Assembly (NCBI RefSeq): GCF_000315625.1 | Contig: NW_005434576.1 | Coordinates: 62,001 to 126,000, forward strand | DNA length: 64,000 bases | Direction: 5' to 3' | Origin: Guillardia theta CCMP2712 | Taxonomy: Eukaryota > Protista > Cryptophyta | Shown: positions 56,384 through 62,237 of the stretch, piece after piece | Layout: every line of letters begins with the position of its first letter | Numbering within the stretch: position 1 is the first letter of the stretch | Notes under the pieces: generated by a model | What the model was told of the DNA's origin: nothing | What the model saw: the letters and a program-made list of their open reading frames with translations, nothing else | The model's database searches: none | Program-made: the position numbers and the translations under genes

Positions 56384-56865
56384 AGTAAATGAGGAGTATT
56401 AAATCAAAAAGGTTTATAAGAAAACTACCAATTATCAATATTTAATAAATTTATATGATGAAATCAATATAGTGCACCTGCATACTACTATGTTAATCCC
56501 TGTAGATCAGTAGTGAGCAACTCAGTAATGAAAAATATTTTGTACCGAAGTTATTAATTAAAATTCCACAGGAAAGCTGGCTTCACACCGGTGGTAGAAT
56601 ATAAGATGAAAAGGGAGAGATGGGGGTAGGGGTCGATCACATTGCGACCCGCCTCTCTCTCCCATTTGTAAGAGACCCAGCTGGTTGGAGGAGGAGGAGG
56701 GACCCAGCTGGTTGGAGGAGGAGGAGGGCGAGGAGGAGGGGGAGGGGGAGGGGGAGGAGGGGGGGGGGGGAGGGGAGGAGGTGGAGGGGCACGACATTAC
56801 ATAGAAAAGAAATGCCTCGACATTACATAGATTTTACATCACAACTCGGGATGAGCACGAGTAGC

Positions 56866-59616
56866 CTATCCTTTGATGCAGATGACGGGTCTGAGCTTCA
56901 CGCACTTCCTTGAGATGCCAGCTGCATGGCACGTCTCGATGACCTGCCTGCCATTGAGCGGCCAAGACAACGTCGAAGATCTCTCACCTCGCTAACATCC
57001 TTGTAGCTTTGTGGCGCCTCCTCCGCTACCAACTTCTTGGTCGCGACCCTCGCTGTACATCCTCGATCCTGGCAGGCAGATCTTCAGCCCTCGTAGCACA
57101 GTTGTGGAGTTGAGGTCACCTCCACCTCCTTCAAAACAGCCCTGGAGTCAAGGCTTCGCATCGCTGCCTCCAACTCTCAGGTCGTTTGCAGGCTTCAAGC
57201 AACCAGACAGCACCTTGTGATCGGCTCATCGCTCTTCCAGCTCCATGGCAGGTCGAGCCGAACGTGCTCTCCATGGCCTTGGCCGTCCCCGTGAGGACGT
57301 AGCTGCACGTTCCCATGGAGCCACCGACGAGGACGGGTTGTCCGATGCTCCGATACTTGTCACAGATCTCTGGAGATCCAGGGCCGAAGGCCCTCGTCGC
57401 CCCTGCAGGAGGCGATGACAAGAAGGAGAGAAGCTTCGGTCAACCAACCTTTGCGGTGCACCAGGACCTTCTTTTTGACTCCATCCACCATGTGCTCCTG
57501 CGTGCCAAGCACGTGATTCGAAGCCGGTCCTCTAGGCGAAGAGAAAGTTCGGCGGAGACCTGGGGCGGGGGGTAGGAGAGGGGGTTGGGGTTGGCAGGAT
57601 CGAGAGAGTTCAAGAGGACGAGACAGGGAAGAGACAAACACTAAGATGGTATCGATTCTTACCTCAACCTTCGCAATGTTGTGGGATACATCGTAAACTG
57701 TGCTCATTCCGAGTTCCTTCTCGTCCCTCTCAAAGATTGTTGCGAAGCTTTGCCGGACAGCTTTTGCCATCAGACATCGATTGACAAACGCGAAATTCGC
57801 TGCTGCTCGCATGGCAGCAAGGTACTTCTGTCCCTCCTTGGACTGAAAATACATCAAACAGCATTTCAGAGCTGTAGACACGATAAGGAACAAACTACCT
57901 TGATACGACAGCAAGCCAACTGCCTGTCTACTACCGAGATCCCCTAAGCGTAAAGGTCAAGGGAAGCAGCCATGGGGTGGGCAGATTGAGTCACTTGTTG
58001 CTTCATAACCTTCTCTGCCTCGGCCACGGCATCCGTACAGACCTTGAGGCATTTCAACAAACGAACAGATTGAGAAGCTGCAGCTACCTGATGCCCAAGA
58101 CCTCTGCTTCCACTATGCAGCATGATACAAACAGTGCCAAGTTTGAGACCCATCGCGGAAGCTGCTTCTTCATCGTATACTTCCTCCACCACTTGAACCT
58201 CTGCGTAGTGATTGCCGGAACCTGCAAACATACCCGATGGTAAGAGTCAAATGCAGAACCTTCGCTTTGCACACCAAGTGACCCGCATTGATTTCTTCCT
58301 CGCGCTTTCGCACGGTCACTCACAGCATCTGGGTCTGCGCCTTCGAAAGATCCTCTCTCTTCGACCCTGTCATTCATGATAATCACTCCCGAACTCATCA
58401 AACTTGTTTCCTTGCTTACACTTCCCGATCTTCCGGCCAACACAAATTCCTCTCCTCAGCCCACGCCATTCCTCGCCGGAGGATATCATCAAGCTCCTGT
58501 GCATACAGACTCAACTCCCTCCAAGCTCTCCGTGTTGCTGAAACCTTGCCGTCCGCTTGACCCAACACACTTCCTTCACCCTGCGATGCAGTGAATGTCA
58601 CAACAGTAGCGCAGGACTGGCGCATGGAAACTCACAACTCCCACTGGGATGTTCTTGAAGAGGAGATCTGCAAGCCGATTCTTCAATGCAGCATCACCTA
58701 TCACATCGCGCTCGTGAAGGTTTGTACGCAGCAACCGAACCCCGCAGTTGATATCGAAGCCGACACCGCCTGCAAGAGATTGAGATGTGTGGACGTTTAT
58801 CTGCTGCCAACCTGGAGAGACGACAGAATCATCATCATCCATGTCAACAGCCGCGACATTTCCTATCGCAAATCCATATCCGCTATGGATGTCGGGCATG
58901 CCTATAGAGCTCGACACCACTCCAGGTAGCGTTGCTACGTTGGAAAGCTGCTGGATGGCGGACAGAAAGCCTCCCTTGCTCCCATTTGCCTGGTTCTCAA
59001 GCATCTCCTTCAACACCTGCTTCAAGAGAGGCTTGTTGGCATAGAAACTCGCACTCGATCTCATCCCCTCAATGTGTCCTTTGGGTATCGTAAATAGCTG
59101 GTTGCCGTCCCATTGGATGTACGGCGCCGACTTGAGCATGCTCTCGATGCTGGTATCGTCGATCTCAATACTTTTCCTTGCACGATCATCACTCAATCCA
59201 CCTCCCCGCAGATGCCAGTTTCCTCTTTTCGACATTTTCTCTTCATCCTGGTTATTGGCGCGGGCTTTGGGTTTCCTCGAGAACAAGTTGCTAAGTAGCC
59301 TTGCTGGATATTTGTACAACCAGGCCTCTCCAACAGCAATCTTCTTCCTTATCGTGCTAAGAATTTGCATTCCTCCTCTCTCCGTGCCCTTGCTCTCCCT
59401 CGAACTTCGCCATAGCCCTCCTCCTCTCAGACGGAGCGGCTCGGCTCCTAATGCACCCAGGCTCCCGTAAGAGGCTGTGCATGTGTGAGAGGCAGGAGCG
59501 GAGCCGTGGGAACAGCAGACGACGGCAGAGAGCGCAAGGAGGAAGAGGAAGAGAAGGCTGGAGCATGGCGAGGATGGCCGGTGGCGGCGCCTGTGGGCGC
59601 CTGGTAGGATAGCCAT
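56866..59616 (-). CDS. rtcB: RtcB family RNA/tRNA-splicing ligase with N-terminal signal peptide and LRGG-containing extension
   Basis: [88 protein letters not shown]-stop. Confidence 0.95.
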
Positions 59617-60095
59617 GATGTGCCTGTTAGCTGGAATTTCAATGTTCATACAGTAATTTCATACCACCCCACCGTTTGTAAGCTTTCATATCTGTCAGAA
59701 ACGGGAGTCGATACAATAATTTCAAATATCATTTCCTTGATTTCAAATTTTACAACTCAATTTAAACTTTACTCAAATACCCAGAACTTCGTACGAACGA
59801 AGGTGAGTGGGAAAGGGTGGGGTATCTATTTTGTTTCGGAGGGGTGGGGTAAATGAGGGGCTCCTGGGCGGGGGAAATGCGGAAGTGCGAAAAGAGTAGC
59901 GGTGATAGTGTGAGCAAGTAGGAGGAGAGAGCTGGTAGAGAAGGAGGAGAGAGTTGGTAGAGAAGAAGCATAAGGTTTGTTCGTTCTCAGCCTGAAAGAG
60001 AGGAGAACGCTCTCCATCCACTCCTCGACCACACTCGTTGCCCTCCCTGCGCATCGGGAATTTTGAGTTGGAAGTTTTTTTAGCCGAGCAGGAGG

Positions 60096-61632
60096 ATGGG
60101 CATCAAGGGACTGCGACAGGCCGTAGCGGCACACATGAGGGAGGGACATGTCAAGGAGATTGCCGGCAAGACTGTGGTGTGCGATGGACACGCATGGCTG
60201 CACAAGGCGGCGTTTGGATGCGCTTTTGACATTGCCATGGGCAAACCGACTGACAAGTACATCGAGTACTGCATGCACCTTGTGAACATGCTCAAGTTCT
60301 ATGGCGTCACCCCCATTATCGTGTTGGACGGGCGTTCTCTTCCCGGAAAGGCTCGCGTCAACAGCGAGCGAAATGCAAGGAGGGAGAGCCAGCGGGCGCT
60401 GGGCATGGAGCTGCTGCGCCGCGGGGATCGTTCAGGAGCCTTGAAGTGCTTGCAGCAGTCCATCCATGTGACGGCAGAGATGGCACATGCGTTCCATGCG
60501 CGCCTGCAGAGCGAGAAAGTGACATGCATCGTGTCGCCGTACGAGGCCGATGCACAGATGTCGTACATGGTGAGAAAGGGGATGGCTCAGGCTGTGATCT
60601 CGGAGGACAGCGACATGGTTCCCTTTGGGGTTGACATGATACTCTACAAGATGGACACGAGCGGGAGCTGCTGCATCTTCGAGAACAAGCCTCTCGGGGA
60701 GGGGAACAAGAAGTCAATGGACGTCAGCAAGCTGAGCGGAGACGCGAGGATCCATATGTGTATCCTTGCTGGGTGCGACTATCTACAGAGCATCCCAGGG
60801 ATTGGCATCCAGAAGGCCTACGGGCTGATCAGGGAGCACGGGGACGGAAAAAAGGCGATAGAGGCTCTGAGAAAGCATCCCAAGATGAAGGAGAAGGTAC
60901 CGGATGGGTACGAGGACGCGTTCGAGCGAGCGGAGAAGCTTTTCAAACACCAGTGGGTCTACGATATGGAGGAGAGGAAGTTGGTCAACATGACGCAAGT
61001 CCCGGAGGATCACGACGCTGCGCAGCTCGAGGAGATTATCGGGCAGAGGATGTCTGACGAGGACGCGTACAAGGTGTGCGAGGCAGGGACCCATCACCAC
61101 AAGACCCTCCAGCCCTTCTCCTCCTCCTCCTCCTCCACCAATACCACCTCGACCTCCTCTTCTTCCTCCAACAAACACGCTGCCCCCTCATCCTCTACCA
61201 CTTCCTCTCTGTCCTCCTTCTTCAAACCTGCAGGGACAGCAGGGAAAGAATCTAGTGCTGCCAACGGGGGGCAGATGAAGGAGCAGGGAAGGGCTCAAAA
61301 CGTTTCCTCCAAGGCAACAGGAAAGAAGAATACCTCCTCTCCTCCGAAACTCTTCAGACCCAAAACGCCGAACGCAGGAACAAATTCAACCTCCTTCTCC
61401 TCCGAGCTGCTGGCGATCATGCCAGACAAGCTTGACGATCCCCCGAGCAGCCTTGCGCAGGAGGATGGGCAAGCAGAGCTGCCTGAGGCTGATGATGACG
61501 TGGATCGTTCGAAATTTGAAGGAGCGGAGGAGGAGAATATGGAAAAGATGGAAACGGAGGAGTACAGCCATCAGGATATGGACCAGGAGGATGGGGAGGA
61601 GGAAGGAACCAAGAAGGCTCAAGAGGGTGCAA

Positions 61633-61704
<72 letters not shown>

Positions 61705-62237
61705 AAGTCAAGGAGCAGGAGCAGGAGAAGGAGAGGGAGAAGGAAGAACCCGTGGAGGCTTCGCTGGAGCATGGGGAGATGGAGGTGGATGTGATCGACC
61801 TCCTGCACTGCGAGGAGGTGAAGCGAGTGAAGCAAAAGGGAAGGCGATCTCCCTTGCAGAAAAGAACGGGAACAGGGTCGAGCAAGAAGATTTCGACACC
61901 TCCTACCGTCAGGAAACGGCAGGACGTGCTGAAGAACTTGTTCGCCAGGCCTGGCCAGCGGGACAAGGCGGAGGAGGGGAAGGCGGAGCAGAAGGAACAG
62001 AAAGGAGAAGCAAACACGGGAGGACAAGAGAAGAGTGTAGGGGACGACAGCGAAGTTACCTGCCGCGACAAGGAGGAGGCAGCAGTGGTTAGGATGAAGC
62101 CTTTGCATGCAAGGGCGGACAAAAGGACTGCAAGCAGGCCCGCGGCTGAGAGGTCGAGGAAGAAGCTCAGGAAGGAGGTGAAGGTGACGAGTGGGAAGGG
62201 ACCCATGGACGCCTTCCTGGTCGCCATGAACAAGTGA
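60096..62237 (+). CDS. EXO1: Exonuclease 1 (XPG/Rad2 family)
   Basis: MGIKGL, DGHAWLHK, VLDG, SPYEADAQ, ISEDSD, AGCDY..IPGIG, FKHQWVYD; long disordered tail ending MDAFL. Confidence 0.93.
61636..61726 (+). repeat. (GAGCAG)n coding repeat giving poly-(EQ) in EXO1
   Basis: Directly visible. Confidence 0.95.

What the first reader, a model, noticed from the sequence alone, without database searches (positions are those of the whole stretch)
59197..59616. RtcB with a signal peptide and two ubiquitin-tail mimics (LRLRGG, HLRGG): candidate periplastid/nucleomorph tRNA ligase
Seen: the N-terminus has a hydrophobic core [15 protein letters not shown] with no Phe after the likely cleavage region, then LRLRGG (59436-59419), a basic spacer and WHLRGG (59217-59200) before the catalytically intact RtcB body. 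Established: LRLRGG is the ubiquitin C-terminus cut by deubiquitinases; RtcB is normally cytosolic/nuclear; in complex red plastids, bipartite leaders lacking +1 Phe go to the periplastid compartment through the ERAD-derived SELMA route; cryptophyte nucleomorph tRNAs include intron-containing genes. Inference: a host-encoded ligase imported to splice nucleomorph tRNAs, with its leader removed by a DUB-like protease at LRGG.
Basis: partly seen in the sequence, partly recalled or inferred. Interest (0 to 1): 0.7.

Follow-up and report, generated by a model that had tools for sequence, protein, structure and literature searches.

The report
Periplastid-targeted RtcB with ubiquitin-tail leader
The alga Guillardia theta has a second, intact RNA-ligase (RtcB) gene whose product starts with a secretion signal and a conserved ubiquitin-tail motif (LRLRGG); this leader type heads well over a hundred genes for cytosol-type and starch proteins, so the ligase is very probably sent into the relict red-algal cytoplasm, where nucleomorph tRNAs have to be spliced.

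Summary
The minus-strand gene (CDS 59616 to 56866, 14 exons) is Guillardia theta RtcB XP_005824233.1. It carries a basic N-terminus, the hydrophobic core [21 protein letters not shown] at 59436-59419 and WHLRGG at 59217-59200, followed by a catalytically intact RtcB body.

Spliced RNA contigs cover the hydrophobic segment and the start codon. A second, leaderless, human-like RtcB lies on contig C6.

The motif is not chance:
- It is the only conserved island in the leaders of 10 orthologues.
- About 73 of the first 100 genome-wide pattern hits encode true LRLRGG, against 32 expected.
- 38 of 60 sampled hits lie about 40 residues behind a Met plus hydrophobic segment, against 1 of 20 for the reversed peptide.

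Cargo of such leaders includes eEF1A, ribosomal eL22, HAT1, an RRM protein, starch phosphorylase and a starch-binding module, which fits the periplastid compartment. The only archease gene found has a similar leader ending in HLRGGG.

Import and cleavage were not tested. The diatom periplastid deubiquitinase clade is reported absent from cryptophytes. A red-algal origin is not shown: the gene groups with a chlorophyte RtcB paralogue clade.

Earlier follow-ups of this scan reported the same LRGG leader class on other DNA of this genome. I found no paper describing the motif or a periplastid RtcB.

The parts
56792..59694 (-). Transcribed span of the RtcB paralogue gene (14 exons, 13 GT..AG introns of 42-165 nt)
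   Evidence: Spliced contigs from three independent runs (X1 to 59694, X3 to 59626, X2 to 59588) with 13 identical joints. Exons as reported, boundaries within 2 nt: 58811-59694, 58635-58768, 58544-58579, 58419-58495, 58273-58365, 58086-58219, 57994-58040, 57899-57942, 57662-57842, 57448-57496, 57214-57401, 57119-57163, 56986-57067, 56792-56941.
56866..59616 (-). Coding region: ATG of MAILPG at 59616-59614 to stop TAG at 56868-56866
   Evidence: tblastn of P0349 (XP_005824233.1, 669 aa) on the window; sequence reading. The RNA-derived product P0002 covers it from MQILS onward.
59647..59649 (-). Upstream in-frame ATG ([17 protein letters not shown]), an alternative start that would only lengthen the n-region
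   Evidence: ORF 58576..59649. Only the X1 contig reaches it.
59503..59616 (-). Signal-peptide-like segment (residues 1-38): basic n-region, h-region [15 protein letters not shown] (59512-59556), small residues at CCS/SHG
   Evidence: mean hydropathy 2.97, n-region charge +4. Heuristic only.
59437..59502 (-). Ser/Thr/Ala/Gly-rich spacer ([22 protein letters not shown]), transit-peptide-like, no aromatic residue at its start
   Evidence: 6 S/T, 0 K/R, 1 D/E.
59419..59436 (-). Motif 1, LRLRGG (ubiquitin C-terminal hexapeptide), residues 61-66
   Evidence: L63, R64 and G65 are the only invariant or near-invariant leader columns among 10 orthologues. The distance from Met is typical of the genome-wide class.
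59218..59418 (-). Basic linker between the motifs (20 K/R against 8 D/E in the 84-residue stretch 59167-59418 counted, which runs on past motif 2; includes RKKIAV, SRKPKAR, KMSKRG). Function unknown; possibly a second sorting element
   Evidence: In the orthologues this position holds the conserved GWLSKAA..AASAAASLVSP segment.
59200..59217 (-). Motif 2, WHLRGG, residues 134-139, about 15-20 residues before homology to canonical RtcB begins
   Evidence: Loosely matched in orthologues (SLRGGEG, RPRGGGV, PPRGGRG).
56869..59199 (-). RtcB ligase body (exon 1 remainder to exon 14) with intact metal-binding and GMP-histidine motifs
   Evidence: Pfam PF01139 exon hits. End-to-end alignment to RTCB structures 9i8v and 7p3b. 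Motif positions.

Best explanation
This is a nucleus-encoded second RtcB (3'-phosphate/5'-hydroxyl RNA ligase) of Guillardia theta that is made with a bipartite leader.

Proposed route (inferred):
1. A signal peptide takes the protein into the ER lumen around the complex plastid.
2. A transit-peptide-like stretch without an aromatic first residue takes it across the periplastid membrane into the periplastid compartment (PPC), the remnant red-algal cytoplasm.
3. There, or in the nucleomorph, it joins the 2',3'-cyclic-phosphate and 5'-OH tRNA halves left by the nucleomorph-encoded splicing endonuclease.
4. An archease made with a similar leader assists it.

The leader belongs to a large G. theta class in which LRLRGG or LRGG lies about 40 residues from the start and sometimes abuts the mature domain. 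It most likely marks where the leader is cut off, by a protease specific for the ubiquitin tail that has not been identified. In RtcB a second copy of the motif sits next to the catalytic body.

Shown here: gene structure, transcription of the leader, intact catalytic motifs, existence of the paralogue, conservation of the motif, and its genome-wide association with signal-peptide-like segments and PPC-type cargo.

Inferred: localisation, substrate, and cleavage at GG.
For: - Spliced RNA contigs include the hydrophobic segment and the ATG at 59616.
- The leaderless canonical copy on C6 starts MVVRTYEEECKY. It groups with the Baffinella canonical RtcB (99*), while the window protein forms a separate clade (96*) with six leader-bearing environmental orthologues.
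- Those orthologues keep the order signal peptide, spacer, (L/M)RLRG(G/A)G, while the rest of the leader drifts.
- Genome-wide the pattern gives 353 hits against 255 for the backwards control. 73 of the first 100 encode true LRLRGG, against 32 expected.
- 38 of 60 sampled hits have an upstream Met plus hydrophobic segment, against 1 of 20 for GGRLRL (Fisher p=3.6e-6). The median distance from Met to the motif is about 41 residues.
- Cargo behind such leaders: eEF1A (motif directly abuts GKEK...), carbohydrate phosphorylase (36), CBM20, HAT1_N, RRM and ribosomal eL22 (67), a methyltransferase (36) and a RETICULATA-like protein (37).
- The only archease gene found has the leader MGSTGVLLVLHLQALSSSLVS...RARHLRGGGG.
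- Literature: nucleomorph tRNA introns are excised in vivo (PMC4090602); candidate endonucleases are nucleomorph-encoded and no ligase is listed (PMC6559170).
- No Trl1-type ligase domain was found in the genome (a weak negative).
Against: - No localisation or N-terminal protein data exist.
- The signal peptide was judged by hydropathy rules only.
- The RNA evidence comes from assembled contigs, which cannot show the transcription start or exclude a shorter minor isoform starting at MQILS or MSKRG. The one raw-read run gave only 4 reads.
- The deubiquitinase known from diatom PPCs (ptDUP) has no cryptophyte member (PMC12412216), and deubiquitinases normally need the ubiquitin fold, which is absent here.
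- The spacer before motif 1 has no Lys or Arg, which is unusual for a transit-peptide-like region.
- After a cut at motif 1 an extension of roughly 100 residues (about 85-110 across the orthologues) would remain, and its role is unknown.
- The orthologues are unnamed environmental sequences, so their cryptophyte origin is inferred.
Confidence: 0.62

Rival explanations
1. The protein does go to the PPC, but LRLRGG is not a deubiquitinase-type cleavage site. It could be a sorting or recognition element, for instance read by the ERAD-derived SELMA machinery or a ubiquitin-tail-binding factor. It could also be cut by an unrelated protease, for example after Arg.
For: - The motif is conserved and enriched, but no data bear on cleavage.
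- The ptDUP clade is absent from Cryptophyta (PMC12412216).
- There is no ubiquitin fold upstream: only RtcB is found in the ORF and the spacer is 22 residues.
- In RtcB orthologues a conserved segment (GWLSKAA...) follows the motif directly, as if motif and segment formed one element.
Against: - In the eEF1A paralogue the motif ends exactly where mature eEF1A begins (GKEK...).
- The residue after GG varies (S, G, M, Q, E...), as expected for a site defined by its upstream side, like ubiquitin precursors.
Confidence: 0.25
2. The leader sends RtcB elsewhere: to the plastid stroma, the ER lumen or secretory route, or mitochondria. It would then have nothing to do with nucleomorph tRNAs.
For: - A signal-peptide-like N-terminus alone does not name the compartment.
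- One class member is RETICULATA-like, a family of plastid-envelope proteins in plants.
Against: - No aromatic residue follows the likely signal-peptide cut. Such a residue is the established stromal mark in cryptophytes (PMC3017844 background).
- Cargo of the same leader class is cytosolic, nuclear or starch-related: eEF1A, eL22, HAT1, RRM, phosphorylase.
- By established knowledge, organellar tRNA introns are self-splicing group I/II introns, so no RtcB substrate is known in the stroma or the ER lumen.
- The h-region is too hydrophobic for a mitochondrial presequence.
Confidence: 0.08
3. The leader is mostly not translated. The functional product starts at an internal Met (MQILS or MSKRG) and is a second cytosolic or nuclear RtcB; the motifs are then chance or relics.
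For: Database ORF calls from partial transcripts start at MQILS (P0001, P0002). Contigs cannot exclude a minor shorter mRNA.
Against: - Three RNA assemblies run through the hydrophobic segment, and two of them through the ATG at 59616.
- The frame is open from that ATG.
- Orthologues keep a signal peptide plus the motif.
- Shuffles give p about 2e-4 for the motifs.
Confidence: 0.05

Closest known systems
Eukaryotic RTCB/HSPC117 tRNA ligase (human RTCB, PDB 7p3b, 9i8v)
   Same: The same fold-length alignment (E about 1e-177, roughly 55-57% identity). All metal-binding residues and the GMP-histidine motif are kept. It is expected to join 2',3'-cyclic-phosphate and 5'-OH ends with archease as cofactor.
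   Different: It carries an N-terminal leader of about 150 residues with a signal peptide and two LRGG motifs. It belongs to a paralogue clade separate from the canonical clade, which also holds G. theta's own second copy.
Bipartite targeting signals of nucleus-encoded periplastid proteins in cryptophytes and diatoms (Gould et al. 2006; SELMA import)
   Same: A signal peptide followed by a transit-peptide-like stretch that lacks the aromatic +1 residue, placed on a cytosol-type housekeeping enzyme that also has a leaderless host paralogue.
   Different: A sharply conserved LRLRGG/LRGG motif inside or ending the leader is not part of the published description, as far as four full-text searches show. 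The spacer before it has no basic residues.
Ubiquitin precursors and their C-terminal LRLRGG cut by deubiquitinases; LXGG sites of viral papain-like proteases
   Same: An identical hexapeptide. A variable residue follows GG. In one class member the motif abuts the mature N-terminus.
   Different: No ubiquitin fold precedes the motif. The diatom periplastid deubiquitinase ptDUP has no cryptophyte orthologue (PMC12412216). Cleavage has not been observed.
Chlorophyte second RtcB paralogues (Trebouxia, Tetradesmus, Caulerpa, Hariotina)
   Same: Nearest named relatives in the tree (18-row clade, 95*), at 58-60% identity, with N-terminal extensions.
   Different: Their extensions are acidic, with no signal peptide and no LRGG. 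Their function is unknown.

Membership tests
RtcB (Pfam PF01139) RNA ligase | Match to the family profile above its curated cut-off | tested here: met
   The first exons alone score 77.7 bits (cut-off 27). Four further exon hits are over the cut-off.
RtcB (Pfam PF01139) RNA ligase | Conserved Asp/Cys/His metal ligands and the histidine that is guanylylated | tested here: met
   FDINCG, GNHY, HSGSRG, SHN and CHGAGR are all present and aligned to RTCB 9i8v.
RtcB (Pfam PF01139) RNA ligase | RNA 3'-P/5'-OH ligase activity | not testable with these tools
   Needs an enzyme assay.
Periplastid-targeted proteins with a bipartite leader (cryptophyte) | N-terminal ER signal peptide | tested here: inconclusive
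   Basic n-region (+4), a 15-residue h-region with mean hydropathy 2.97, and small residues at -3/-1. No trained predictor was available.
Periplastid-targeted proteins with a bipartite leader (cryptophyte) | Transit-peptide-like region without an aromatic residue at +1 | tested here: met
   His or Ser follows the plausible cuts CCS| and SHG|. The cut position itself is only predicted.
Periplastid-targeted proteins with a bipartite leader (cryptophyte) | Localisation in the PPC or nucleomorph | not testable with these tools
   Indirect only: the same leader class carries eEF1A, eL22, HAT1, starch phosphorylase and CBM20.
Ubiquitin / ubiquitin-fusion proteins | Ubiquitin fold preceding LRLRGG | tested here: not met
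   No ubiquitin family hit in the ORF. Only 22 low-complexity residues lie between the signal peptide and the motif.
Deubiquitinase-type cleavage substrates | Cleavage directly after Gly-Gly | not testable with these tools
   Only positional hints: LRLRGG|GKEK in the eEF1A paralogue, and motif 2 lying 15-20 residues before the RtcB body.

The most novel reading that the evidence does not exclude
Cryptophytes mature their periplastid-imported proteins at a ubiquitin-tail motif (LRLRGG/LRGG) with a ubiquitin-type protease. The ERAD-derived import system would then also supply presequence removal. RtcB and archease, both carrying this leader, would be the missing imported ligation half of nucleomorph tRNA splicing, whose endonuclease half is nucleomorph-encoded.
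Probability: 0.33. Interest if true: 0.85.

Novelty: new variant of a known kind. Interest (0 to 1): 0.68.

Why it matters
Nucleomorph tRNA genes carry odd introns that are known to be removed, yet no ligase for them has been named. This gene, together with the archease gene, is a concrete and testable candidate.

Beyond this gene, the LRLRGG leader gives a simple sequence mark for the periplastid proteome of cryptophytes. From my sample I estimate about 160 genes with the exact hexapeptide. The motif also points to an unknown processing or sorting step tied to the ubiquitin machinery of SELMA import, in the one lineage where the known periplastid deubiquitinase is missing.

It would improve targeting predictors, which now rely on the absence of an aromatic residue. 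It would also make the presequence protease findable, using leader peptides as bait or substrate.

Tried and rejected
- Red-algal origin: the tree (quick search, SH-aLRT support only) puts the gene with chlorophyte paralogues. The one red alga sampled (Cyanidiococcus) sits in the canonical clade. Origin is left open, not rejected.
- Testing the leader on known nucleus-encoded SELMA parts:
  - zf-NPL4 found only the leaderless host copy.
  - Three E1 genes were found, but their N-termini could not be resolved within the flanks. Inconclusive.
- A Trl1-type ligase search (PF09511) found nothing, but the controls were silent too, so this is only a weak negative.
- The raw-read RNA run X17 laid only 4 reads, so no transcription start could be mapped.
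- Curtis et al. 2012, with its predicted PPC proteome, is not held. I could not check whether this RtcB is on their list.
- The search of protein representatives returned nameless hits at 50% clustering. I used them only for outgroups and long relatives.
- Papers on transit-peptide borders and diatom PPC proteins hold no LRGG information.
- The hypothesis that the leader is a degenerate ubiquitin is rejected: no fold, and the spacer is only 22 residues.
- Recent duplication as the source of the two motifs is rejected: their codons differ.
The full-length protein was handled through the database proteins P0002 and P0349 and by exon-wise references.
Full report
**What is there**

The window is part of contig C98 of an 87.1-Mb assembly in 669 contigs. 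The protein encoded at the finding is in public databases as XP_005824233.1 / EKX37253.1, '3'-phosphate RNA ligase RtcB [Guillardia theta CCMP2712]', 669 aa (P0349).

On the minus strand the reading frame opens at ATG 59649 and again at ATG 59616 (the annotated start). It reads [72 protein letters not shown]...[49 protein letters not shown], and the RtcB body follows. Both are the 6-mer LRGGGL, written in different codons, so they are not a recent duplication.

**Gene model and expression**

Contigs from three public runs of different studies are spliced at 13 identical GT..AG introns, so they derive from mRNA. They run without a break from exon 2 through the whole leader: X1 to 59694, X3 to 59626 and X2 to 59588.

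Contigs cannot show the true start or exclude a rare short isoform, and the one raw-read run gave only 4 reads.

I built no joined-exon sequence. The RNA-derived database protein P0002 (581 aa, from MQILS) and the RefSeq model P0349 served as references. They differ at four internal indels, and the RNA joints agree with P0002.

P0002 aligns end to end with solved animal RTCB structures (E 2.5e-177). It keeps the metal-binding and guanylyl-histidine motifs FDINCG, GNHY, HSGSRG, SHN and CHGAGR. 'Catalytically intact' holds.

**A second copy**

A Pfam RtcB search of the whole genome finds exactly two loci. One is this gene. The other is on C6, and its first exon starts MVVRTYEEECKYVKQVDGTCYRIDKGF..., the canonical leaderless N-terminus.

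In a 58-row tree (quick search, SH-aLRT support only):
- The C6 copy pairs with the canonical RtcB of the cryptophyte Baffinella (99*). Both sit inside the canonical clade (100*) with animals, green algae and the red alga Cyanidiococcus.
- The window protein forms a clade (96*) with six leader-bearing environmental orthologues.
- That clade lies inside an 18-row clade (95*) whose named members are chlorophytes: Trebouxia, Tetradesmus, Caulerpa and Hariotina.

So the gene is not a recent duplicate of the host gene, and a red-algal origin is not shown.

**The leader in orthologues**

Ten related sequences have long N-terminal extensions. They are unnamed environmental or transcriptome proteins, taken as cryptophytes by orthology only. 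Where the N-terminus is complete they show:
1. A hydrophobic signal-peptide-like segment.
2. A non-conserved spacer.
3. The motif: AMRLRGGGW, TLRLRGGGW, VMRLRGAGW, VLRLRGAGW, ALRLRGGV / ALRLKGGV, HHLRGGGW, VLRLRGGGI or VVMRGGG.

In the alignment the only invariant or near-invariant columns before the RtcB body are L63, R64 and G65 of the G. theta protein.

A second RGG-type site nearer the body recurs only loosely (SLRGGEG, RPRGGGV, PPRGGRG). In most orthologues motif 1 is followed by a conserved segment GWLSKAA..AASAAASLVSP, which G. theta replaces with a basic linker. The role of this region is unexplained.

**Is the motif more than chance?**

Within the gene, shuffling the 155-residue leader gives p=1.7e-4 for two LRGG, 2.4e-4 for LRLRGG and 1.3e-3 for any repeated 6-mer.

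Genome-wide:
- The degenerate DNA pattern for LRLRGG has 353 hits, against 255 for the tool's backwards control.
- Of the first 100 listed, 73 use only Leu and Arg codons, where 32 are expected from the degeneracy of the pattern.
- The reversed peptide GGRLRL has 193 pattern hits, of which about a quarter are true.

I fetched 60 true LRLRGG sites from the 17 largest contigs. 38 have, in frame and without a stop, an upstream Met followed within 30 residues by an 11-mer of mean hydropathy 2.0 or more. For GGRLRL sites the figure is 1 of 20 (Fisher p=3.6e-6). The motif lies 22-109 residues from that Met, median about 41. None of the 60 is ubiquitin.

Scaling up (353 x 0.73 x 0.63) suggests about 160 genes with the exact hexapeptide, before counting variants such as HLRGG.

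A further example lies 11 kb beyond the window's end: MAPARTVMHMGLATLALLLPSIGC...GDLW-LRLRGG.

**What the class carries**

Pfam scans of exon-sized open stretches behind 39 such leaders named ten of them:

| Cargo | Note |
|---|---|
| eEF1A | leader ends ...SPSM-LRLRGG-GKEKHHCSIVVIGHVDSGKS, exactly at the mature eEF1A N-terminus |
| Carbohydrate phosphorylase | |
| Methyltransferase | |
| RETICULATA-like protein | |
| CBM20 starch-binding module | |
| Group-1 glycosyltransferase | weak hit |
| HAT1 histone acetyltransferase | in the same open frame as the leader |
| RRM protein | |
| Ribosomal protein eL22 | in the same open frame as the leader |

These are proteins of a eukaryotic cytosol and nucleus plus starch metabolism. 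In cryptophytes starch lies in the periplastid space (established knowledge), so the class fits the periplastid compartment and nucleomorph.

None of the leaders I read has an aromatic residue after the hydrophobic segment. That residue is the published stromal mark (background in PMC3017844).

**Functional context**

[quoted passage not shown] 2005, as reviewed in PMC4090602).
- All four sequenced cryptophyte nucleomorphs encode candidate splicing endonucleases. No ligase is mentioned (PMC6559170).
- RtcB joins exactly the ends such endonucleases leave (established knowledge).
- The RtcB cofactor archease has a single detectable gene in the genome (C88). Its first exon reads MGSTGVLLVLHLQALSSSLVSKPLMSMDPNS...GRARHLRGGGGEVK...YEYLDHTADV. 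That is a hydrophobic N-terminus plus HLRGGG, with internal Met residues that could also give a leaderless form.
- No Trl1-type ligase domain was detected (a weak negative).

**Mechanism: shown and inferred**

Shown:
- A transcribed, intact RtcB paralogue.
- A leader whose only conserved element is the ubiquitin-tail motif.
- Strong genome-wide coupling of that motif to signal-peptide-like segments and PPC-type cargo.

Inferred:
- Import by the ER and then SELMA.
- Action on nucleomorph tRNA halves.
- Cleavage after GG.

The cleavage idea is favoured by the eEF1A junction and by the variable residue after GG. Three points count against a classical deubiquitinase: there is no ubiquitin fold, the ptDUP clade is absent from Cryptophyta (PMC12412216), and no protein data exist. 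A sorting role, or an unrelated protease, remains a live rival.

**Novelty**

Four full-text searches (LRGG with periplastid; LRLRGG with Guillardia; 'lrgg' anywhere with 'cryptoph'; Guillardia with PPC and tRNA ligase) found nothing relevant. The three papers that mention both RtcB and nucleomorphs do not link them. The library lacks most subscription papers and Curtis et al. 2012, so prior mention cannot be excluded.

Earlier follow-ups of this same scan (s1-431643, s1-431668, s1-437043, s1-437025) reported the LRGG leader class on other DNA of this genome. My counts, control and cargo list are independent of them.

Added here are RtcB and archease as members of the class, and the link to nucleomorph tRNA splicing.

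Noticed in passing
G000:C88:64326-64844 (L110:1252-1770, + strand): The only archease (PF01951) gene found in the genome starts with a hydrophobic segment and a leader ending in HLRGGG, before the archease domain. Internal Met residues (MSM) after the hydrophobic part could give a leaderless form, which hints at dual targeting of the single cofactor gene.
   Followed up: partly
window 56866-59616 (-), P0349 against P0002: The RefSeq model XP_005824233.1 differs from the RNA-supported splicing at four internal places. It has 16 and 5 extra residues, and 10 and 5 residues are missing. The RNA-derived form aligns to human RTCB with only a 3-residue and a 1-residue gap.
   Followed up: yes
G000:C3:1063500-1065500 (L097, - strand): An eEF1A paralogue whose leader ends ...SPSM-LRLRGG directly before GKEKHH..., the canonical mature N-terminus. 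This is the cleanest positional hint for a cut after GG.
   Followed up: partly
G000:C98:135500-138500 (L135, - strand), about 11 kb beyond the window's end: Another gene with a signal-peptide-like start and LRLRGG (MAPARTVMHMGLATLALLLPSIGC...GDLW-LRLRGG-SGQ). Its cargo was not identified.
   Followed up: partly
window 60096-62237 (+): An Exo1/XPG-type nuclease gene (XPG_N and XPG_I) lies head to head with RtcB. Its RNA contig begins near 60011, so the two genes share a divergent promoter region of about 320 bp. Its C-terminal half is low-complexity, with a long (EQ)n run.
   Followed up: no
window 56700-56800: A C/T-rich low-complexity tract with a 24-nt direct repeat (cctcctcctccaaccagctgggtc, twice) lies just past the 3' end of the RtcB transcript. 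The reads tool skipped it as a repeat.
   Followed up: no
proteins P0008, P0012, P0124, P0125, P0127 (Trebouxia, Tetradesmus, Caulerpa, Hariotina): Chlorophyte green algae have a second RtcB paralogue clade with acidic N-terminal extensions, distinct from their canonical RtcB. It is the nearest named relative of the cryptophyte leader-bearing RtcB, and its function is unknown.
   Followed up: partly
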